Virus record (IMG/VR): IMGVR_UViG_3300043411_000921
Location: 124,001-188,000 of that record
Reading direction: 5' to 3' (one strand)
Length of the DNA stretch: 64,000 bases
The notes under the pieces were generated by a model, which saw only the letters and a list, made by a program, of their open reading frames with translations, did not search any database and was not told where the DNA came from. Below are positions 41,030-51,830 of this stretch, in pieces; the first letter of the stretch is position 1, and each line of letters opens with the position of its first letter. Both the position numbers and the translations under genes were made by a program.

Positions 41030-42093
41030 TATCGGCGTGGGAAGGTGTGACGGCCACGATTGTAGGAATAAGCGGGGAAAACCGGCATGTTGACCATTGA
41101 AGTTTGAATCTCTTCGGTGAAACAAAAGCCAGCAGCTTTGATGCAATCGAGCACAGATGCCTTTTCCGTGGCACGGAACACCCAGGTGCGGGTAGAGTCC
41201 ACATAAGACCGATTGGACGCCTGGATATTCTTCTTGAGGGCTTCCACGAGCTTTGGAGTCTTGCCAGCAACCCAGGGAACGTCCAGGGTGATAACCGTGG
41301 GCCAGCAAACCACCCTTGCACCATCTCGGGCTGCTGCAATAGAGTTTTGCTGAGGATTTACAGCGATCCACTCCTCACACATCTTGATGATGTTGGGAAC
41401 ATCCCCCTCAAAGCACGGCCAATACTCCATCACAACTTCAACAAAAGCCTTGTGAGACTTCGCTGGACAAGTGAAAGTCCGACCGGAGAGCTTGGGAAAA
41501 ACAACTCCGGGAATCTTGCGCATCGCATTCCACCCAGCCTTGTTCTTGCTTCCAGTCAAACTGATAAGGCCATTTTCAAACTTCAGGGTTGCTTCACCCG
41601 TGCTGCTCTTTCCAGCAAGCACGCCAGCAAGGCCAGGATAACCCAGAGACTTGACAACTTGAATCAAGCAAGTCTTGTTTTGGGTGCTGATTCCAACGAA
41701 GGAGAGCATGAAGTCTACGATCTTGACAATGGGACGATAATCCTCACCAGCAAGATAAAACCCACTGTCGCCCTCGTTCTTTTCCTGGAGCTTCTCGTTC
41801 TTCTGCATGAGGAGTTCGAGGGTTGCAGCCCAGATGGGTTGAATGGCGAGGGGAAGTCCGTCAGGAACCACAGACATTCCATAGAGTGTGGCTGCTGAGA
41901 AATTTGCGGGAACAGTGCGAGCAAAAAGCGCGGTGTCCTTCTTCGCGCAGATGGGGCCGATGCCACGCTCCCAGGAAGCGGGATCGGTCAATGCGGCGAA
42001 GCATCGAGAACAATGACGGACATCATTGCAACTCCGAGTGATGCTCGGAAACATGTTGAGGATATCTTGAAAGCTGGTCGTGGCGTTCTTCAT
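41029..42093 (-). CDS. DUF6011-type zinc-finger early protein
   Basis: CSRC..LTDPASWERGIGPIC. Confidence 0.8.
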   Translation of the reverse strand: MKNATTSFQDILNMFPSITRSCNDVRHCSRCFAALTDPASWERGIGPICAKKDTALFARTVPANFSAATLYGMSVVPDGLPLAIQPIWAATLELLMQKNEKLQEKNEGDSGFYLAGEDYRPIVKIVDFMLSFVGISTQNKTCLIQVVKSLGYPGLAGVLAGKSSTGEATLKFENGLISLTGSKNKAGWNAMRKIPGVVFPKLSGRTFTCPAKSHKAFVEVVMEYWPCFEGDVPNIIKMCEEWIAVNPQQNSIAAARDGARVVCWPTVITLDVPWVAGKTPKLVEALKKNIQASNRSYVDSTRTWVFRATEKASVLDCIKAAGFCFTEEIQTSMVNMPVFPAYSYNRGRHTFPRR

Positions 42094-42099
42094 GACCAG

Positions 42100-42128
42100 A
42101 CTCTATCACGGCTTCTCGGGTGGGTCAA
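42100..42128 (-). promoter_or_regulatory. early sigma70-like promoter
   Basis: TTGACC-N17-(TGa)TAGAGT, ATG 6 nt downstream. Confidence 0.82.
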
Positions 42129-42134
42129 GAGCCT

Positions 42135-43322
42135 TTATCTGGCCTGTGCGATTTTTTCTGGGAGGGCTACATTCCAGAGATTTGCCTTGGCTGTCCTTGA
42201 CTTGGTAAACCCCAAAGACTCCAACTTCTTTGCCATTAGCTGAGGCTTATAGTTCGAAACATGAACCAAGCATTTCTCTTCCTTCAAAAACAACATCCTC
42301 GCTTGGATAATCTCCTGAAGGGAAGACTTGGGCTCTTTATCTGTCCAGGGTCGAAGGGAAGAAAAAAACTCCCGGTCCCCATCCTTCAAAGCTCGAACCT
42401 CTTCCAACCCAATCTTCAAATTAGGCTTGTTCTTCTTCAACCAAGAGAAGTAAATCTCATTGACCTTCTCAAAAGATGTATTGAATGCCGGATACTTCGT
42501 TACCGAGTCAATAACTTGTGTAGCTTCATCAAAAAATTCACAATAGTTTTCAAAATGTTTTAGGTAAGCGGAGCAAAGTTTTTCTAGTTGAGCACGTTCT
42601 GCCCCTTTGGCTCTGTCAGAGGAAAGAAGTCTGTGGAGAACAATGTTTCTAACGCCAACTGGGACGGGTTCGGTTTTCATTTTTTCTCTGACATGCTCGA
42701 TTGTTCCAGTTGACCAGTCAGACAGAGAGGACTTAGCCGCCATCTTTGATTTGGTCGTTGTTGTTTTTTGTGTCTTGGTTGATTTCCTTGATTTTAGTGC
42801 GTTGAGGAATTTTTCTGGTAGGTCTTGAATTTCATTCGGACAGACTTCGCCATAAGTGCCACGAGTATGTTTGCTTGGTGGAATAACAACATAACCGTCT
42901 TGGCCTCGTGTATCTACCTTGTCCGCCAAATGGGATGCAGTGTTTTTTGTCGGGGTCGATGTCCAAAACCAAAAATGCCACCCACCAGATCCAGTCCGAT
43001 AGTGAAAAGTCGAAGAAAGTTCCTTTATGATTGGGTGATCTGCCGCATCAACATCAACAACAATAAGATATTTCCCAGTTTTTTCAGATTTTCGTCCTGT
43101 TGCGAGGCCAAAGTTCATTTTGTGACTGAGAGAAAACCACTCTTCAACCTTTTCTGGTTTATTGCTGGCAATGATTTTCCAATTGTAACGAAAGAGTGGG
43201 TGTTTTCCAGGAGAAGCGCAGTTTTGTTCGCCACACGAACAAGTGTTGTTAAGCCGAATCGAATAAAGTGGAAGTATGTGAAATTTGTTTTCCAGAATGA
43301 TTTGTTTAATTGATGATGGCAT
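42135..43322 (-). CDS. bifunctional DNA primase/polymerase (Prim-Pol)
   Basis: CSCG..C.SPGKHP, NFGLATG, VVDVD, TGSGGWH, DTRGQDGYVVIPPS, GVRN. Confidence 0.9.
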   Translation of the reverse strand: MPSSIKQIILENKFHILPLYSIRLNNTCSCGEQNCASPGKHPLFRYNWKIIASNKPEKVEEWFSLSHKMNFGLATGRKSEKTGKYLIVVDVDAADHPIIKELSSTFHYRTGSGGWHFWFWTSTPTKNTASHLADKVDTRGQDGYVVIPPSKHTRGTYGEVCPNEIQDLPEKFLNALKSRKSTKTQKTTTTKSKMAAKSSLSDWSTGTIEHVREKMKTEPVPVGVRNIVLHRLLSSDRAKGAERAQLEKLCSAYLKHFENYCEFFDEATQVIDSVTKYPAFNTSFEKVNEIYFSWLKKNKPNLKIGLEEVRALKDGDREFFSSLRPWTDKEPKSSLQEIIQARMLFLKEEKCLVHVSNYKPQLMAKKLESLGFTKSRTAKANLWNVALPEKIAQAR

Positions 43323-43360
43323 TTCAACCTCAAAGTATCAGGTTGAAATGCCATCATCAA
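43310..43360. repeat. perfect 21-bp inverted repeat covering the Prim-Pol start codon and promoter
   Basis: ttgatgatggcatttcaacct-N9-aggttgaaatgccatcatcaa. Confidence 0.9.
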
Positions 43361-43575
43361 GAGACTCTTTCGACCACCGCGCCCGCAGGGATCGCCCCCG
43401 CGTCCGTGGTGGAGCCGCGAGTGCCGCCGCTCGTGCGGTAGTAGTAGGTCGTCGAGGGCGCGGGAGCGCCGACGCGCGGGGCGAAGGCCCCGCGGAGGGG
43501 CGCAGGGATGGGCTTATACAGCCCAGGGGCGATCGATGGCGAGGGCGGGGCGAGGCCTGCGGTATAGGTGCTCAT
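43357..43575 (-). CDS. small Pro-rich protein (high-GC island)
   Basis: GAGGT RBS, GC-rich codons. Confidence 0.65.
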   Translation of the reverse strand: MSTYTAGLAPPSPSIAPGLYKPIPAPLRGAFAPRVGAPAPSTTYYYRTSGGTRGSTTDAGAIPAGAVVERVS

Positions 43576-44660
43576 GGCGGCACCTCACGAGAGCGTCGGG
43601 GTCGAGGAGTCCCACCGCAGCCACAGGCCCGCGGCATAAATCCAGTACTCGGTCGTGCCGTCGAGCGTCTGGCCATTGGCCCGGCCCGCCACGGTGGCCC
43701 ACCGGATGCCGCGCGCAAATCCGACCCACCCCGTCGTGGTGGACGGCGCGCCCGCACACATCACGGGGACCGGCAGCGGCACCTCGTACCCGCTGCTAGG
43801 CAGCGCGCCGCCCTGCTCGCCTTCGGGCGGCGCCAGCCGCCCGTAGGTGCCGAAGAGCGACGCGAAGGTGACCCGCTGGTTGCTGCCAGCCCCGACGAAT
43901 CGCTTGTAGATCAGGGCGTAACCCGTCTGGAGGGCCACCCCGGCTGCCGCGTAGACCGTCAAACCCGTGGCGTTGTAGTACCCGACCCACAGGGGTGGGT
44001 CCGTGTCGCTCGGGTCGGGCGAGTCGAGGGGTACGTCGGCAAGGAGAGTGCGGACATTGCCGCCACCGCTCGGGAGGCACATGAGTCGCCAGCCGAAGTC
44101 GTCGATGTCGTCTGCCGAGATGAAGAGCCGCCCGGGCGTTGCCGTGAATGCCGACGCTGCCGAGAAAAGCTCCGTCGCGTCCGTCGCCGTAGGCAGCACC
44201 GTAGCGGTGCCACCCGTGACGAACCCCGCCGCGCTGCGAGAGATGGTCCACGCGGCATCGCTCGCGCCGCGCTGGAAGAGCCACTCGCGGCTTGAATCCG
44301 GCGAACGCACGGTGAACCACGCGGAGGTGTTGCCGAGGTTGCCCGCGCCGCTACCGCCGCTGCCGTAGGGGTTGGCGCTGAGCGGTGGGTTGGCGCTGAG
44401 CGGTGCGCCGGTGCGGTCGGTGTAGGTGGTCGCGTCCGACCATCGCGTGATGACCCACCCCGCGGAGAGCAGGGTGTCGATGAGCGCGTCGACGGCGACA
44501 GCGCCCGACGCGGGCGAGGATACGTGTGTGATAGTGGCCATGTGTCAGCTCCCGATCATCGAGGCAGCGGCGCAGATAAGCCAACGGTATGAGCCATCGG
44601 TGGGCAAGAGTTGCGCCGCCGAGATGAGGGTCTGCTGGTCGGCTGCCGTTGGGGCTGGTG
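43370..44660. other. high-GC horizontally acquired island
   Basis: Counted 60-nt lines inside are 65-80% GC versus 30-47% just to the left. Confidence 0.85.
43585..44541 (-). CDS. putative tail/receptor-binding accessory protein (high-GC island)
   Basis: Gly/Ala/Thr/Trp-rich beta protein downstream of the tail fibre; GGAG RBS. Confidence 0.7.
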   Translation of the reverse strand: MATITHVSSPASGAVAVDALIDTLLSAGWVITRWSDATTYTDRTGAPLSANPPLSANPYGSGGSGAGNLGNTSAWFTVRSPDSSREWLFQRGASDAAWTISRSAAGFVTGGTATVLPTATDATELFSAASAFTATPGRLFISADDIDDFGWRLMCLPSGGGNVRTLLADVPLDSPDPSDTDPPLWVGYYNATGLTVYAAAGVALQTGYALIYKRFVGAGSNQRVTFASLFGTYGRLAPPEGEQGGALPSSGYEVPLPVPVMCAGAPSTTTGWVGFARGIRWATVAGRANGQTLDGTTEYWIYAAGLWLRWDSSTPTLS

Positions 44661-44685
44661 TAGTGAGATTTTCCAAGTATGCCAT
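44545..44685 (-). CDS. 46-aa chimeric mini-ORF at the island junction
   Basis: MAYLENLTTPAPTAADQQTLISAAQLLPTDGSYRWLICAAASMIGS; TAGTTA at 44703-44698. Confidence 0.45.
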   Translation of the reverse strand: MAYLENLTTPAPTAADQQTLISAAQLLPTDGSYRWLICAAASMIGS

Positions 44686-44708
44686 TGTGTTAAAATCTAA
44701 CTACAGTT

Positions 44709-47111
44709 TCACCCAAAAAACACGGCTGAAAATAGCGCATAGTCGGAAATGCCTCCTCCGCTCTTGTTGACCCTCAATTCCAAAACTCTTGAAGAACCAG
44801 TGGCAACAAAAGAAGCTGTTTTGTGCGTTGGGGTTGTCTCAGTCCATGACAAAGAAGAAAGAGATGATGAGTTAACAAGATCATACAATTCCACACTTCC
44901 AGTGACTCCGGCTACGGAAGCAAAACCAATGCCTTCGAGTGTGTAGGATGGAGAATTTAGATCTGTAAAAAGAGCGTAACCCGCGATGGTGCTTGCAGAA
45001 AGGGTTGTTGTGACAACCCCAGCCAGAATTGGGATTTTACTTGAGGCAGAGAGTTCCCACTGACCAATTGTGTTGTAGTTTGCTGTAATGCCGGAACTTC
45101 CTGTCAAGAAAGGATTTCCGTTTGTAGTAGTGTTCAAAGAACCCGTTATGCCACCAAAGACTTCAAATGAACCTGTTACTTGAACGGAGCCGGAAGCAAC
45201 TCTAAAAACATCGTGCCGATTAAAACTACTATCCCCGTCCCCGACAACAAAAAGAGAGGAAGCATCTTGAATGTTGAATTTTCCGAATGCGGCTTGTGTC
45301 GTTGTGGGGTCAAGATTCCCAGCGGTTTCTCCTTCTGCGATTGTTCCAAGCCCCGCAGCGAAGCTTCCACTGCCATTCGCAATCGTTTGCCAACCTGTGG
45401 TGTGGGAGGCTGGGCCGTTCGTTAAAGTGTAGTAGCCTTCGGCGTGGGAATAGCTGCCGTTGGTTGATGAACCAACCCCTTCTGCGTGGGAATGCTCTGC
45501 GCCAGTGGTTGTTCCATTTCCCTCAGCGTGAGAAAAATTACCATTTGCTGTTGAAAAAAAGCCTTCAGCGTGCCCACCGAGAGCGTTAGATTTTGCGAAA
45601 TAACCTTCTGCGTGTGCAGCGTATGCTGCTGCTGTTGTAAACACACCTTCCGCATGGGAAAAGAACCCAGATGCTTGTGTGCTTGAACCTTCGGCGTGAG
45701 TGGCTTGGCTTGATGCAATAGTGTCTTGGCCTTCGGCGTGAGAGTTGTCACCGGATGCAATGTTTCTTATTCCCTGGGTTACGCTTCCAGTGATTTCGGC
45801 CCCCAAAGAGGCACTTAGTTTTGCAATTTCGATAGAGCTGGTCGTGTAAATGATTGTGCTGTTTATTTCAGACCAGAGGCTTGTTCCACCAGAAGAGCCA
45901 GAAATTTCCCACTGGCCGTTTGTGTTGTAGACTGTTGTGATACCCGGCCCACCAATCAAAAACGGACTACCATCGACGGTACCACTCAAAGAACCAGTGA
46001 TTTTTGAAGAGATGAACGACCCAGTTACTTCAACCGAGGTGTCATTAACTCTGAAAATATCAGATCTGAGAAAATCATCATCATCTGTTCCGTTTCCAAC
46101 AACGAACAATGAGAAATCGTTGTTGCGAAGATTATACTTTCCAACTACATTTTGTCCAGAGCCAGATGCGATTGTTCGGATACCGGAAGCGTGTGAAAAG
46201 TCGCCTGGGGTGTCGGTGTAGGAACCTTCGGCATGTGACCAGTTTCCAATAGCGTTTGTCTCAAATCCTTCAGCGTGCGATCCCACCCCAAACGCTTCTG
46301 CGCCTTCCCCTTCTGCGTGGTTATAATCGGCATGTGCTCTTGTCATTCTCCCTTCTGCGTGGGAATAATCGCCAGAAGCAATTGTCATTGTGCCTTCTGC
46401 ATGGGAACCAAGACCTGAAGAAGTCGCCATTCTCCCTTCTGCGTGGGAATTGATTCCACTGGCGAGTGTACCATCTCCCTCCGAGTGACCACCAGCACCT
46501 GATGCCGTTGTTGCAAAACCTTCTGCGTGCGAATGATTTCCAGAAGCAGTAGAATTGTACCCTTCCGAATGAGAATAGTCGCCCGAAGCGACTCCATATT
46601 GGCCTTCCGAGTGACTACACAAACCCGAAGCCACTGTTTCTTCTCCTGATGCGACAGAAGATCCGGTGGCATAGCTGCCAATTCCAGCGATCACACTAGA
46701 TCCTGTGACAACGAGACTGATTTCCCCAACAAATTCATTTCGGATTTGAACAGATCCAGTGGAGTAGGTACTACCTGAGATGTCTGAGAACCAGATTTGG
46801 GCACTGCCCCCACTTGCGCCAGAACCATCAACAGACAGGTTCCCAGAGACGTGTAGATCCCCTCCAAAAACCGCAATAGTAGGCGTGCTACCTCCCTTGC
46901 CCCCAACCGATCCAGAGACGTAGAAAAAGGCGTCAGAGCCGATTGGCGAGGTGTCAAAAATAGCAGGGTTGATATTCCCCTGGTTGGCTGGAGTTCCTTG
47001 AGCACTCAAAGGATAAACAAGAAGGCATTCGGCGGAACCCGCATTGGCTCCGCTGACAATCAGCTTGTTTACTTGAATTTGATCGGAACGAAAATCTGGT
47101 GAGTTTGGCAT
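44709..47111 (-). CDS. tail fibre / adhesin with YadA-head-like 14-aa SHAEG repeats
   Basis: Two blocks of (S/G)HAEG..T.A.G repeats and many VTGS motifs; TAGTTA upstream. Confidence 0.85.
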   Translation of the reverse strand: MPNSPDFRSDQIQVNKLIVSGANAGSAECLLVYPLSAQGTPANQGNINPAIFDTSPIGSDAFFYVSGSVGGKGGSTPTIAVFGGDLHVSGNLSVDGSGASGGSAQIWFSDISGSTYSTGSVQIRNEFVGEISLVVTGSSVIAGIGSYATGSSVASGEETVASGLCSHSEGQYGVASGDYSHSEGYNSTASGNHSHAEGFATTASGAGGHSEGDGTLASGINSHAEGRMATSSGLGSHAEGTMTIASGDYSHAEGRMTRAHADYNHAEGEGAEAFGVGSHAEGFETNAIGNWSHAEGSYTDTPGDFSHASGIRTIASGSGQNVVGKYNLRNNDFSLFVVGNGTDDDDFLRSDIFRVNDTSVEVTGSFISSKITGSLSGTVDGSPFLIGGPGITTVYNTNGQWEISGSSGGTSLWSEINSTIIYTTSSIEIAKLSASLGAEITGSVTQGIRNIASGDNSHAEGQDTIASSQATHAEGSSTQASGFFSHAEGVFTTAAAYAAHAEGYFAKSNALGGHAEGFFSTANGNFSHAEGNGTTTGAEHSHAEGVGSSTNGSYSHAEGYYTLTNGPASHTTGWQTIANGSGSFAAGLGTIAEGETAGNLDPTTTQAAFGKFNIQDASSLFVVGDGDSSFNRHDVFRVASGSVQVTGSFEVFGGITGSLNTTTNGNPFLTGSSGITANYNTIGQWELSASSKIPILAGVVTTTLSASTIAGYALFTDLNSPSYTLEGIGFASVAGVTGSVELYDLVNSSSLSSLSWTETTPTHKTASFVATGSSRVLELRVNKSGGGISDYALFSAVFFG

Positions 47112-47153
47112 AGTTTGTGTGGGTAACTATGCCAAAACAAGGCCAGAAAGGTT

Positions 47154-48020
47154 TTAGAGGATTTCGGAGGAGATCGTTGCGAGCGACCAGCCTTTCGTGG
47201 ATTTGCGGCGCCCTTTTAGAACCGCGCACAATTTTGTTGGCGCAAGACCGTACAAACGACAAAAAGCTGCCAAGCATTGAATTTCTGTTATCACAACCCC
47301 ATCGGGGCCGATCAGTTGTAATCCCAAATAGGTTTTTGAATTATGATGTTCTGTTCCCATCTTCTTACCCAAATGGGCCAAACGATTTTTTTGCTTGGAT
47401 TCTTCGGTGTGATGTTTGTTGAAATTAGGATGCTTCGAACCTTTCAACACATTTTTTGGACCAAGCTTTTTCTTTTCCGTGCCAACCAAAGTCCACCCTT
47501 TTGTGCTGGGGGCTTGTCGATTTAGCAACTTCCACAAACACTTCGGATTCAAATGGTGTTCTTCTGCAAAACTTGTAACGGAATCGACACTTGTATACAG
47601 AATTAAATCCGGTGAGAGTAGTTGAATATTGCTGTATTGTTTTCCCACCTTCTTGGATCCGTGCGGGGAAGAAGCATCTTTTCTGAGATTGTAACACTTG
47701 TTCTTACCAAAAGAAGAATCAATGTAGCGTTGTTCTACCAACAAACGATCTTCCTTGGTACCACCAACGACTTCCAGAACCTCAAACACGAATACCTCTT
47801 CCCCGCATTTGTCAAAATCGGCTTGCAGATAACGGTTAGAATGCTTCCCTCTTCTTAGGGAAGCGGTGTGCTGATTCCAGCGGACCTTGAAGCATTTTGC
47901 CGAACCAACATAGACTCTTTCGTTGAGTTTGTTTCTGAGTCTATACACACCGCCTTCATTCGATTTCCCTCCGAACTTGTATTCCACAGGACGTAACCTT
48001 TCATGGAATACATAGTTCAA
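47154..48020 (-). mobile_element. free-standing GIY-YIG homing endonuclease
   Basis: GVY..YVGS..R, NUMOD3-like HTEESKQK, two SPD/GPD..KGW repeats. Confidence 0.9.
47156..47184. repeat. 29-bp direct repeat (copy of the phoH 3' end)
   Basis: 28/29 identical to 48043-48071. Confidence 0.9.
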
Positions 48021-48040
48021 AAACCCCTGTTTTCCAGGCT

Positions 48041-49432
48041 TCAGAGGATTTCGGAGGAGATTGTTGCGAGCAAACTCCTTTCCCCGCGCAAAAATGTCAC
48101 ATGTCCGGCAATATCTTGATCTTTGAAGCGTTCAATAACAATTGAGAGACCATTGGAAACTGAGTCAACGTAGGTGTTGTCGATCTGCTCCAAGTCTCCA
48201 GTCAAAACAATCTTGGTGTTTTCTCCAACACGAGTCAATATTGTTTTCATTTCGTGCAGGTTCGTGTTTTGAGCTTCGTCAATAATCACGAAAGCGTTGG
48301 CGATGGAACGTCCACGAATGAAGGTCATTGCTTGAACTTCAATGATTCCTTCGTCGAAGTAACTCTGAAGAACTTGCTCGTCATGTCGTGGTTGTTTTTT
48401 CTTTCCACCTTCTTGCATTGAATTGCCGATGAGAAAGCGAAGGTTGTCTTTGATTGGAGCAAGCCACGGTTCCAGTTTTTCATTCAAATCTCCTGGAAGG
48501 AACCCAACGTCTTTTCCGAGGGGCATGATTGGACGGCAGATGAGCAGACTTCTGTACCGTTTTGTGTTCAAGACTTGTTCAAGTCCAGCGTTGATTGCGC
48601 TAAGTGTTTTTCCCACACCGGCTTTTCCAGCAAGAGTGACAAGTTTCACGGCTGGGTCAAAGAGAAGGTCGGCAGCAAATTCTTGTTCTTTGTTTCTTGG
48701 TTGAAGTTTTCCAGGAGAAGGGGTCAATTGTCGCAATGGTTTGTTTTTGGACACGAACCTTGCAACTGCGGACTGTTGTCCGTCTTTGATAACAACAAAC
48801 TGGTTAGGATGAAGGTCTTGTTGGAGGTCTTCGGGAAGTGTGTAATCATTTTTGTTGTCATGGAAGTCATCAACCACAGTTTCATCGCGGCTGGAAACAT
48901 CAATCGTTTTTACGCCCGAGTAAAGACTGTTCACGCTTGTTGCGACATTGAACTTACGGTAATCCTCACAGGGAATTCCGAGGGCCTGAGCTTTCAATCG
49001 AAGGATTGTATCTCTTGTGACAAGGAATGCGGTTTCACCAGCAGCTTTTGCCATATCCAAGTAGTTTTGACAGAAGTGAACAATGGTGTTGTCACCGCTC
49101 TTCTTTGTCTCCAATTCAGATGGCAAACCGATTGCTGTTTTCTCATCGGCACACAAATCGGAGAGTGCAAGGATACGGAGGGTTCCCAACTTCTTTCCGA
49201 GTGGAATTCCAGCTTTGAAATCTTTGTGGACCTTGGTCAAGTCAGCAAGTTTTCTGACAACTTCTCTGGCGTTTCTGCCGACTTCATCTTGACGGTCTTT
49301 GTGTCTGTCAAGTTCCTCCAGCACAATGAGAGGAATCACCAAGTCATGCTCTTCGAAACCAAACAGGCTGTTGCTGTCAGTCAACAGAACGTTTGTGTCA
49401 AGAATGTAAGTCTTGCGGGCTTTTTTTGTCAT
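48041..49432 (-). CDS. phoH: PIN-PhoH (PhoH2) protein
   Basis: ILDTNVLL, EELD, GKAGVGKT, GFLPG, IRGRS, IDEAQN, GDLEQID. Confidence 0.95.
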   Translation of the reverse strand: MTKKARKTYILDTNVLLTDSNSLFGFEEHDLVIPLIVLEELDRHKDRQDEVGRNAREVVRKLADLTKVHKDFKAGIPLGKKLGTLRILALSDLCADEKTAIGLPSELETKKSGDNTIVHFCQNYLDMAKAAGETAFLVTRDTILRLKAQALGIPCEDYRKFNVATSVNSLYSGVKTIDVSSRDETVVDDFHDNKNDYTLPEDLQQDLHPNQFVVIKDGQQSAVARFVSKNKPLRQLTPSPGKLQPRNKEQEFAADLLFDPAVKLVTLAGKAGVGKTLSAINAGLEQVLNTKRYRSLLICRPIMPLGKDVGFLPGDLNEKLEPWLAPIKDNLRFLIGNSMQEGGKKKQPRHDEQVLQSYFDEGIIEVQAMTFIRGRSIANAFVIIDEAQNTNLHEMKTILTRVGENTKIVLTGDLEQIDNTYVDSVSNGLSIVIERFKDQDIAGHVTFLRGERSLLATISSEIL

Positions 49433-49534: not shown

Positions 49535-49849
49535 TCACTCGGTTTCGTCTTCGTCTCCGTCGTCTGTGGGAGTCTCAACAGGTGCAACAACGGCTTTCTT
49601 GTGTTCGAGACGTGCGAGTCGGGTTTCTTCCCTTGCGGCCAGAGTTGCTTTTCCAACGAGCACACCCAGAGTGCGCAGAGCCCTCGTTCCCTTCCTCACA
49701 CGAACACCGGCAGACTGATTTCCCTTCACCGCAAGCTTGTTGACTTCTGCATCAACCTGCTCAACCAAAACCCTAAATTCAGTCCACAAGTCCAAAACTT
49801 GCTTCTCACCAGCAGTCATTTCCCTAGCAGCCTTTGTCTTCTTTGCCAT
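49535..49849 (-). CDS. histone H1/Hc1-like small DNA-binding protein
   Basis: KGNQSAGVRVRKG motif in a helical hairpin. Confidence 0.75.
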   Translation of the reverse strand: MAKKTKAAREMTAGEKQVLDLWTEFRVLVEQVDAEVNKLAVKGNQSAGVRVRKGTRALRTLGVLVGKATLAAREETRLARLEHKKAVVAPVETPTDDGDEDETE

Positions 49850-50456: not shown

Positions 50457-51830
50457 ATGTCGCACAATTATTTCGCTGAGAAACAAGAGGTTCAAGACAA
50501 TCTAATTCGGGCTGTTGACAAGCTGGAGAGACAAATGAGTGCGATCACTCTTGCTATCAGTTCTCCAAACCAAACATATCTCACCGAAAATTCTTTTCAA
50601 CTTCTTACCAAACTTCTTCTTCCGTCCAACCCTTGGGAAAGAATGCTCTATCAGGAGCTTGTTCAGAAGTGTTATCAATTGGAAATGCGTTGTCAGGGTT
50701 CATCCCCGATGTTTCTCAGAGCCTTTGCTGCTGCTGCAAGAGAAATCACGAGGAAACAAGGGTCTTACCGTGAGCTTGTGGAGGATAACCAGAAGAGCAA
50801 CCAAAGATACTCTCAAGAAATACTTCCTCACTGCTACCCTTCCTCCCCATCTTTCATCAAAGAAGAAATACAAAAAGCCTGTCAAAACCTCTCAATCCCA
50901 GCAACCGCTGTCGAAGAGGCAATCAAGTTGGCTGGGGTTGAGGGAAATATTGTCTTGGCAGAGGAAGAAGTCCCATCTGTTCTGGTTGAGTTGCAATTTG
51001 GCTATAACTTCTCAATGAACCCATTCAAAGGTTTCATCCCAACAAATGGAACTTGGACGAGAGCGGAAACAAAAATCATGCTGGTAGACGGAATGCTAGA
51101 ATCTGTTTCTGAAATTGACAAGCTTCTAAATGGCTGCTATTCCAGCAAAATCCCGGTGATCTTGATTGCACAAGGTTTTTCAGAAGAGGTAGTTGCAACC
51201 CTTCATGCAAATTACTCCCGAGGTTCTTTGGATGTTTTTCCTTTGAGAACTCAACAGAACTTGGAAGCAATCAACATTATGAATGACATTGCTGTTGTTT
51301 CTGGAACTGATGTTATCAGCACGCTCAAAGGAGAACGTTTGGGAACAGTGGGTTTGGATTCCCTTGGTTCGGTTGAAAAGGCTTCAATCACCGGAAACGT
51401 TTTGACAATTCACAATTCCAGAACCAGAGGAAATGTTCTTTCTCACCTTGGTTATCTGGAGAAGAGAAGGGTTGAGCAAGCAGAAACATCACAGGTTTCA
51501 GATTTGGCAGATTTGACTTCAAAGAGGATTCAGAATCTTTTGGCACATCTTGTGAAGGTAACGATTCCAAAGGGGGACGTTAATCGCTTCAGGGGGATTA
51601 TAGACAACGCCATTCGGGCTTGTCGTACTTCCATCACCTACGGTTATTGCAAGCCGCTAGAAATCAACCTGGAGCGATTGGAGCCCATGTGGAGAAAAGC
51701 TCACCTGGGTGCGATCAAAAATCTGGAAGGTGAGAAAGTTTCGAGTGTTGGTTTGTGGTTGTCTGTGAGGATGGGAGTGGAACTTGCAACGGCTTATTTC
51801 ACTGCTGCTGGGGCATTGGTCAGGAACTAA
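50457..51830 (+). CDS. divergent GroEL/Cpn60-like chaperonin
   Basis: Apical-domain-like DGMLESVSEI..PVILIAQGFSEEVVATL..N, DIAVVSG, LGSVEK; no GDGTTT. Confidence 0.7.
   Translation: MSHNYFAEKQEVQDNLIRAVDKLERQMSAITLAISSPNQTYLTENSFQLLTKLLLPSNPWERMLYQELVQKCYQLEMRCQGSSPMFLRAFAAAAREITRKQGSYRELVEDNQKSNQRYSQEILPHCYPSSPSFIKEEIQKACQNLSIPATAVEEAIKLAGVEGNIVLAEEEVPSVLVELQFGYNFSMNPFKGFIPTNGTWTRAETKIMLVDGMLESVSEIDKLLNGCYSSKIPVILIAQGFSEEVVATLHANYSRGSLDVFPLRTQQNLEAINIMNDIAVVSGTDVISTLKGERLGTVGLDSLGSVEKASITGNVLTIHNSRTRGNVLSHLGYLEKRRVEQAETSQVSDLADLTSKRIQNLLAHLVKVTIPKGDVNRFRGIIDNAIRACRTSITYGYCKPLEINLERLEPMWRKAHLGAIKNLEGEKVSSVGLWLSVRMGVELATAYFTAAGALVRN

What the first reader, a model, noticed from the sequence alone, without database searches (positions are those of the whole stretch)
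47154..48071. Homing endonuclease insertion duplicated the phoH 3' end and uses it as its own C-terminus
Seen: PhoH and the adjacent GIY-YIG protein both end LATISSEIL*. The DNA at 47156-47184 and 48043-48071 is 28/29 identical and 887 bp apart. Inference: the element entered the last codons of phoH, restored the gene end, and fused in frame with the displaced original end. This pinpoints the insertion site, suggests a recent event, and allows precise excision by recombination.
Basis: partly seen in the sequence, partly recalled or inferred. Interest (0 to 1): 0.6.

Follow-up and report, generated by a model that had tools for sequence, protein, structure and literature searches.

The report
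Mobile endonuclease cassette in phoH tail
A selfish I-TevI-like endonuclease gene sits in the last codons of a jumbo phage's phoH gene, inside a 36-base duplication that keeps phoH whole and supplies the endonuclease's own last codons and stop; near-identical phages with and without it show that it is spreading in nature.

Summary
On the minus strand, phoH (49432..48041) and a GIY-YIG gene (47987..47154) both end LATISSEIL*. The direct repeat is 36 nt (33/36), spaced 887 bp.

Two near-identical metagenomic phages lack exactly these 887 bp and keep one repeat copy (L104, L116). The native copy carries ACG, like the endonuclease-side copy. The phoH-side copy (ACA) and the codons just upstream travel with the cassette.

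The arrangement was not created in this genome. Endonucleases 64-70% identical sit at the same site in related phages, and three of the four lineages examined carry a phoH-like tail. A sister clade at the same site lacks it.

The cassette is 97.5-100% identical between backgrounds whose flanks differ by 3-15%. Conversion tracts of variable length lie only on the phoH side. The other border always falls at the downstream repeat.

My best reading: an I-TevI-like free-standing homing endonuclease cuts just upstream of the repeat, and the downstream repeat serves as the 3' homology. The architecture resembles the mobile endonuclease ORFs of fungal mitochondria.

L116 matches the predicted repeat-by-repeat excision product, but the direction of that change is unresolved. 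I rate this a new variant of a known kind, of moderate interest.

The parts
48041..49432 (-). phoH (PIN_4 + PhoH ATPase, 463 aa), intact; ends ...GERSLLATISSEIL, stop TGA
   Evidence: The C-terminal motif GERSxLATxAxxIL* is conserved across about 80 phage PhoH loci.
48036..48071 (-). Upstream repeat copy (tail1): last 9 phoH codons + stop + 5 nt. Thr codon ACA. Travels with the cassette.
   Evidence: ACA is present in the filled alleles compared there; the native empty allele L104 has ACG. One filled contig (run X7) has ACG at this position.
48072..48083 (-). Cassette-linked synonymous recoding (GGG GAA AGG AGT TTG versus GGC GAA CGC AGT TTG in empty allele L104). Candidate cleavage and immunity region. 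The shortest conversion tract (versus L017) starts here.
   Evidence: In the close group all 7 endonuclease-free alleles have Arg CGY, and all filled ones have AGR or CGG.
48062..48263 (-). Co-conversion tract in the phoH 3' end: 17 substitutions versus empty allele L104 (about 8%), against 0.4-0.6% in the neighbouring sequence
   Evidence: A filled contig from run X8 carries L104-like bases at 48170-48200, so its tract is shorter.
47988..48040 (-). 53-nt spacer between the phoH stop and the endonuclease start, with GAAAGG (47997-48002) 9 nt before GTG as a likely ribosome-binding site
   Evidence: Read from the sequence. Conserved in L017 and L009; also retained in the remnant locus L079.
47154..47987 (-). 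Free-standing GIY-YIG homing endonuclease gene, 277 aa from GTG 47987 (the mechanical ORF from TTG 48020 gives 288 aa); stop TAA
   Evidence: Pfam GIY-YIG E 3.4e-10 and NUMOD3. I-TevI catalytic domain 1MK0/1LN0, E about 1e-12. Homolog starts.
47718..47954 (-). GIY-YIG catalytic domain (residues 12-90 of 277). Arg36 and Glu85 are invariant and Asn100 nearly so.
47181..47636 (-). DNA-binding region: two repeated strand-strand-helix-helix-strand modules (residues 118-167 and 220-269) with a NUMOD3 segment between them. The last strand is W-S-L, at the repeat border.
   Evidence: AlphaFold2 model, mean pLDDT 80.6; Pfam.
47149..47184 (-). Downstream repeat copy (tail2): displaced native phoH end. 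It supplies the last 9 codons and the stop of the endonuclease. Right border of every exchange block seen.
   Evidence: Residues 273-277 of the model have pLDDT below 50 and no secondary structure is assigned after residue 269.
44709..47111 (-). Downstream neighbour: fibre-like gene (800 aa). It follows phoH directly, after 42 nt, in the empty alleles.

Best explanation
This is a free-standing I-TevI-like GIY-YIG homing endonuclease cassette lodged in the last nine codons of phoH in an uncultivated jumbo phage from freshwater and wastewater.

Shown: The cassette consists of about 12 recoded phoH bases, a replacement phoH end with stop (tail1), a 53-nt spacer, and the endonuclease body. The body has no stop of its own and reads in frame into the displaced native phoH end (tail2). 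Near-identical phages lack exactly this 887-bp unit. The cassette is far more conserved than its flanks across three backgrounds. Conversion tracts of variable length lie only on the phoH side. The other border of exchange always falls at tail2. The same design occurs in a clade of endonucleases at the same site in related phages, with tails resembling PhoH tails.

Inferred: The enzyme cuts endonuclease-free phoH a few bases upstream of the repeat, around 48072-48090, where filled and empty alleles differ by clustered synonymous changes. The left end is resected and copies the donor through tail1, the spacer and the gene. The new strand then anneals to the recipient's own phoH end through tail2. 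The conserved 27-36 nt tail therefore acts as the 3' homology arm, whatever lies downstream.

Inferred: The fused design probably arose once, by one-sided, microhomology-mediated repair joining the endonuclease's GW-x-L codons to the phoH S-L-L codons. The appended peptide itself is probably functionless.
For: - **Identity:** Pfam GIY-YIG and NUMOD3; I-TevI catalytic domain at E about 1e-12; conserved Arg, Glu and Asn; modular DNA-binding region.
- **No intron:** Rfam gives no hit at E<=1, and only 53 and 42 nt are non-coding.
- **Empty sites:** L104 joins 48036 to 47184 with one repeat copy. L116 is a second empty allele.
- **Native versus imported copy:** L104 has ACG like tail2, while tail1 is ACA in the filled alleles compared. 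L009's endonuclease tail equals the PhoH tail of its closest relatives L026, L025 and L015 (95-84% PhoH identity), and its tail1 is foreign.
- **Mobility:** window versus L017, the cassette is 97.5% identical against 80-90% for the flanks; the last phoH mismatch is at 48083 and the first downstream mismatch at 47155. Window versus L105, there are 0 differences over 48433-47156, with flanks differing by 3-13%.
- **One-sided conversion:** 17 substitutions in 48062-48263 versus L104, and none between tail2 and 46815. A shorter tract occurs in X8.
- **Clade-wide design:**
- **Tail-less sister clade at the same site:**
- **Arg codon association:**
Against: - No cleavage data exist, so the cut site and the role of the AGG/CGC polymorphism are inferred. 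The lineages behind the codon association are not phylogenetically independent.
- Borders at tail2 could simply reflect that it is the best-conserved stretch to the right of the gene.
- Other substitution clusters occur elsewhere between the window and L104 (about 50529-50816 and 49271-49310). Mosaic recombination is therefore common in this genome and not specific to the endonuclease flank.
- The window's tail2 differs from L104's tail at two bases around the stop (TAA AACCT versus TGA AGCCT). 'Tail2 = native' therefore rests on one diagnostic base here, plus the L009 lineage.
- For L013 the nearest PhoH relative does not share the endonuclease tail.
- L014's different end is shared with L027's endonuclease, so tails can also be swapped between endonuclease genes.
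- All read evidence comes from contigs, which hide minority forms.
Confidence: 0.75

Rival explanations
1. Literal one-off event: a tail-less endonuclease gene inserted recently into this genome's phoH and created the duplication there.
For: The repeats are 33/36 identical. Empty alleles at about 99% identity exist.
Against: The same cassette, with the same ACA/ACG difference, occurs in L017, whose phoH differs by about 15%. Endonucleases 64-70% identical at the same site already carry PhoH-like tails.
Confidence: 0.07
2. Tail2 is only a neutral scar. Homing uses ordinary homology on both sides, and the coincidence of block borders with tail2 reflects sequence conservation, not mechanism.
For: The tail peptide is predicted to be disordered. 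T4 Seg enzymes home without any duplication (PMC2988022). In the L009 and L013 lineages the two copies have drifted apart. L079 lost the gene by an imprecise deletion.
Against: Two independent backgrounds (L105-type and L017-type) have their right border within a few bases of the tail2 stop, although their downstream flanks are still 85-87% alignable. No conversion is seen on that side in any comparison.
Confidence: 0.3
3. The 887 bp are a group I intron carrying its endonuclease. phoH is completed by splicing to the downstream copy.
For: One source annotates homologs as 'group I intron endonuclease'. The catalytic domain resembles intron-encoded I-TevI.
Against: No Rfam family matches at E<=1. 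Only 53 nt lie before the gene and none after it within the unit. phoH is complete without splicing.
Confidence: 0.02
4. Assembly artefact or chimera produced by the repeat.
For: Short direct repeats can mislead assemblers.
Against: Contigs from four studies span the whole region without joints. 18 runs from 8 studies hold it. Diverged lineages show the same layout.
Confidence: 0.01
5. The tail is kept because the conserved PhoH C-terminal peptide has a function (a partner-binding or stability motif) that the endonuclease borrows.
For: The motif LATxAxxIL* is conserved across the PhoH family. Endonuclease tails in L009 and L013 stay PhoH-like at the protein level despite DNA divergence.
Against: The model leaves the tail disordered. 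A sister clade and L014/L027 work with other ends. There are too few sites for any test of selection.
Confidence: 0.05

Closest known systems
I-TevI (phage T4 td intron GIY-YIG homing endonuclease)
   Same: The catalytic domain aligns at E about 1e-12 with conserved Arg, Glu and Asn. An N-terminal nuclease is joined to a long modular DNA-binding region. The inferred cut lies tens of bases upstream of the insertion site. Conversion is biased to the upstream side, as described for I-TevI (PMC2988022).
   Different: There is no intron. There are two repeated helix-turn-helix-like modules. The gene sits inside a duplication of its target's 3' end and has no stop codon of its own.
T4 Seg proteins and 'intronless homing' of free-standing GIY-YIG endonucleases
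   Same: It is free-standing, sits next to its target gene, shows presence/absence polymorphism between related phages, and transfers together with flanking markers.
   Different: According to the review, Seg cleavage sites lie hundreds to thousands of bases from the gene, and no target duplication is involved. Here the inferred cut is within about 50 nt, and the gene is flanked by two copies of the target end.
Mobile endonuclease ORFs (mORFs) of fungal mitochondria: Allomyces macrogynus atp6; Glomus atp6, atp9, cox2, nad3
   Same: An endonuclease ORF is inserted in the 3' part of a conserved gene together with a foreign replacement C-terminus. The native C-terminus is displaced downstream (PMC3630166).
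   Different: This is a phage, not a mitochondrion. The replacement is only 9 codons. The endonuclease has its own start and a different frame from phoH, rather than being in phase with the upstream gene. The displaced native end is translated as the endonuclease's C-terminus and provides its stop.
Nuclease genes at the boundaries of genetic exchange between phages (PMC10448857; title and abstract only)
   Same: An endonuclease gene marks the border of recombination blocks between related phages.
   Different: I did not read that paper beyond its abstract. No target-end duplication is mentioned there.

Membership tests
GIY-YIG homing endonucleases (I-TevI-like) | GIY-YIG catalytic domain with conserved Arg, Glu and Asn | tested here: met
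   Pfam PF01541, E 3.4e-10, above the cut-off. 1MK0/1LN0 at E about 1e-12. Arg36 and Glu85 invariant and Asn100 nearly invariant in 18 homologs.
GIY-YIG homing endonucleases (I-TevI-like) | Separate C-terminal DNA-binding modules | tested here: met
   NUMOD3 is above the Pfam cut-off; the I-HmuI NUMOD-like match is below it. The model shows two repeated modules with pLDDT 85-92.
GIY-YIG homing endonucleases (I-TevI-like) | Presence/absence at one fixed site in otherwise homologous genomes | tested here: met
   L104 and L116 lack exactly 887 bp. L003, L025, L031 and L064 lack the gene at the same site.
GIY-YIG homing endonucleases (I-TevI-like) | Co-conversion of flanking markers with the gene | tested here: met
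   Tracts of about 12, 110 and 200-360 nt on the phoH side, in different backgrounds.
GIY-YIG homing endonucleases (I-TevI-like) | Site-specific cleavage of the endonuclease-free allele | not testable with these tools
   Only a candidate region (48072-48090) is inferred, from clustered synonymous differences.
Group I intron-encoded endonuclease | Ribozyme core flanking the ORF | tested here: not met
   No Rfam match at E<=1 in 46800-48400. The non-coding flanks are 53 and 42 nt.
Mitochondrial-type mORF element with C-terminal duplication | Two copies of the host gene's 3' end flank the endonuclease ORF, with the upstream copy imported and the downstream copy native | tested here: met
   The support is one diagnostic base in this lineage plus protein-level evidence in the L009 lineage.
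Mitochondrial-type mORF element with C-terminal duplication | Endonuclease ORF in phase with the upstream host gene | tested here: not met
   The phoH stop TGA is followed by a 53-nt spacer. The endonuclease has its own GTG start in another frame.
Integrase island or transposon (att core or target-site duplication) | A recombinase or transposase gene within the unit | tested here: not met
   The 887-bp unit holds only the GIY-YIG gene.

The most novel reading that the evidence does not exclude
The duplication is a working part of the element rather than a scar. By ending in a copy of the conserved last codons of its target, the cassette carries its own 3' homology arm. It can therefore home by one-sided invasion plus annealing into any phoH, whatever lies downstream, in a region where the downstream genes (fibre, accessory ORFs) are hypervariable. 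The repeat length would equal the distance between the cleavage site and the original insertion site. The same repeats would also give a built-in route for clean loss.
Probability: 0.35. Interest if true: 0.7.

Novelty: new variant of a known kind. Interest (0 to 1): 0.55.

Why it matters
This is a natural, population-level snapshot of homing in uncultivated jumbo phages. A single locus shows empty, filled, possibly excised and decayed alleles, together with graded one-sided conversion tracts.

The design, a replacement gene end plus an endonuclease that reads into the displaced native end, was found described only for fungal mitochondria in the papers searched here. In a phage it suggests a general way for free-standing endonucleases to invade the very end of a conserved gene without harming it. 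It may also free them from needing downstream synteny.

There is a practical consequence. phoH is used as a marker gene for phage diversity. Its last 200-400 nt in these phages are horizontally converted and should not be read as vertical signal.

Tried and rejected
- A DNA search of the phage collection gave only weak PhoH hits to Salmonella jumbo phages, with no relative of the locus.
- Exact-peptide scans of viral contigs with the endonuclease found nothing.
- The own genome holds no second copy of the endonuclease or of phoH.
- Rfam found no intron. The promoter and terminator scan found nothing above shuffles.
- Laying contigs of four runs gave no joint lacking the 887 bp. These are contigs, so this says nothing about minority forms.
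- I considered the 9-nt repeat TTTGTAAAA at the borders of the tail-less cassette in L015 as a general target duplication. L026 does not show it, so I leave it as a hint only.
- I first read L014's end KLASDNIIAS as a decayed phoH tail. It is instead shared with L027's endonuclease, so it is a different native end acquired by recombination between endonuclease genes.
- The test of 'tail2 = native' in L013 was inconclusive.
- Comparisons within the L005 and L009 groups were too similar to be informative.
- I did not use the large representative search, structure-library searches or complex prediction. No claim here rests on them.

Full report
**Observation.** On the minus strand, phoH (49432..48041, PIN_4 + PhoH, 463 aa) is followed by a GIY-YIG gene. 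Both ORFs end LATISSEIL*.

The 29-mers at 47156-47184 and 48043-48071 differ at one synonymous base, ACG versus ACA. They are the only matches in the window, and no dinucleotide shuffle gave any match. The repeat is actually 36 nt (47149-47184 / 48036-48071, 33/36 identical, spacing 887) and runs 5 nt past both stops.

The window lies in a 241-kb IMG/VR virus record estimated to be 66% complete, so this is a jumbo phage. That genome holds no second copy of either gene.

**The endonuclease.**
- Pfam finds GIY-YIG and NUMOD3; a match to an I-HmuI NUMOD-like segment falls below Pfam's own cut-off.
- The catalytic domain aligns to I-TevI (1MK0, 1LN0) at E about 1e-12.
- Arg36 and Glu85 are invariant, and Asn100 nearly so, among 18 homologs.
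- All homologs start MEY at the position of GTG 47987, and the closest relative has ATG there. The gene is therefore 47987..47154, 277 aa, preceded by GAAAGG.
- An AlphaFold2 model (mean pLDDT 80.6) shows two repeated DNA-binding modules. The last strand is W-S-L, exactly at the repeat border. No secondary structure is assigned to the PhoH-derived ATISSEIL, and its last five residues have pLDDT below 50.
- Rfam finds no intron.

**Whose sequence is the tail?** GERSxLATxAxxIL* is the conserved end of this PhoH family in about 80 phage loci. Distant homologs of the endonuclease end GWRLLPL*. The tail is therefore PhoH sequence.

**The design is clade-wide.**
- Endonucleases 64-70% identical (P0002-P0005) all sit directly after phoH in syntenic contigs with the order Hc1-like gene, PIN-PhoH, GIY-YIG.
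- Three of the four carry PhoH-like tails. L005 has LATLASEILT in both genes, about 43/46 nt identical. In L009 (LATIASEVL / LATISAEIL) and L013 the two copies have diverged.
- A sister clade (P0006-P0008; L015, L026-L029, L085) occupies the same site without a tail.
- L003, L025, L031 and L064 lack any endonuclease.
- L079 keeps the spacer and about the first 14 codons only, which is an imprecise deletion.

**Empty sites in this lineage.** L104 has PhoH 100% identical in protein, and its DNA is 98.7-99.5% identical. It joins 48036 to 47184 with one repeat copy, so exactly the 887 bp are absent.
- Its tail has ACG, like tail2 of every filled allele. Tail1 is ACA in the filled alleles compared; one contig, from run X7, has ACG.
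- Immediately upstream, L104 reads GGC GAA CGC where the window and L105 read GGG GAA AGG (L017 has GGT GAA AGG): three synonymous changes within 7 nt.
- 17 substitutions versus the window fall in 48062-48263 (about 8%), against 0.4-0.6% in the neighbouring sequence. None falls between tail2 and 46815.

**Spread between backgrounds.**
- L105 (filled) is identical to the window over 48433-47156, while its flanks differ by 3-13%.
- L017 and its seven sister contigs (phoH about 85% identical) carry the cassette at 97.5%. The last phoH mismatch is at 48083, and the first downstream mismatches are at 47155 and 47149.
- A filled contig from run X8 has L104-like bases at 48170-48200 only.
- The left borders therefore vary (about 48082, about 48165, 48263 or further), and the right border is always at tail2.
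- In the L009 lineage the endonuclease tail equals the PhoH tail of the nearest relatives, while tail1 is foreign.

**Mechanism.** The review PMC2988022 states three relevant points. [quoted passage not shown] One-sided repair can join ends at microhomology. Seg enzymes cut far from their genes.

The pattern here fits an I-TevI-like enzyme that cuts just upstream of the repeat. The left end would be resected, and the donor copied through tail1, the spacer and the gene. The new strand would then anneal to the recipient's own tail through tail2.

In the close group, all seven endonuclease-free alleles have Arg CGY at the codon beside the repeat, and all filled ones have AGR or CGG. This is a candidate immunity polymorphism, but the lineages are not independent. 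These steps are inferred, not shown.

**Excision.** L116 is a second empty allele. It carries the filled-type flank (AGG, ACA, identical for 557 nt upstream) and L105-type downstream sequence. That is exactly the product of recombination between tail1 and tail2 in an L105-like genome. It could equally be the unoccupied ancestor of that genome, so the direction is unresolved. No joints were seen in contigs.

**Comparison with known systems.** The closest architecture found is the mobile endonuclease ORF of fungal mitochondria: an inserted foreign C-terminus, the endonuclease, and a displaced native C-terminus (PMC3630166). Here the element is in a phage, the endonuclease has its own start, and it reads into the displaced end. 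No phoH-associated case turned up in the literature searches.

**Verdict.** The duplication is inherited with the cassette rather than made in this genome, and repeat identity is not a clock. I rate it a new variant of a known kind, interest 0.55.

Noticed in passing
L005-L007 1288-3921; also L079, L085, L088: In several related phages PhoH is 800-877 aa and carries a LAGLIDADG_3 domain. The match to the window's PhoH breaks at residue 275/276, which suggests an intein in phoH. The window's phoH lacks it, so the same gene is targeted by a second kind of selfish element.
   Followed up: no
window 45078-45895: About 817 nt of the fibre-like gene (rich in SHAEG-type repeats) are absent from both L104 and L105, with 36-79 nt aligning twice at the borders. 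This looks like a repeat-mediated in-frame length change in the fibre.
   Followed up: partly
L079 5628-5720: Endonuclease remnant. The spacer and about the first 14 codons (MEYRFEGNANKSGG) are retained, then a deletion of about 815 nt runs to the intergenic sequence upstream of the 236-aa gene. This shows loss by imprecise deletion.
   Followed up: yes
L009 versus L026; L014 versus L027: Phages with PhoH 95% identical carry endonucleases of two different clades at the same site. L014 (P0002-like body) shares its last residues DNIIAS* and downstream DNA with L027's 424-aa endonuclease. Endonuclease genes at this site replace and recombine with one another.
   Followed up: partly
window 49535-49849 (-): A 104-aa protein matches the chlamydial histone H1-like family Hc1 (E 2e-7). 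It is conserved upstream of phoH in all related phage contigs.
   Followed up: no
window 47104-47136: A perfect 12-nt inverted repeat with a 9-nt loop covers the start codon of the fibre gene. Related phages have a different conserved hairpin (CCTCTCTACTA...TAGAGAGG) in the phoH-endonuclease spacer. These are possibly translational control elements.
   Followed up: no
window 48011-48025 and 47331-47345: A 15-nt inverted repeat (93% complementary) lies between the spacer just upstream of the endonuclease start and the inside of the gene, 665 nt apart. Its significance is unknown.
   Followed up: no
window 42000-46000: A GC-rich stretch (0.52-0.545, against about 0.45 elsewhere) spans the 318-aa ORF 43585-44541 and the fibre 3' part. 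L032 has a similar ORF downstream of its fibre gene.
   Followed up: no
L003, L005, L009, L031, L064 downstream of phoH or the endonuclease: A 229-237-aa gene (MAGFNPNRKKK...) lies between phoH or the endonuclease and the fibre gene in most relatives. It is absent from the window lineage, where the fibre gene follows directly.
   Followed up: no
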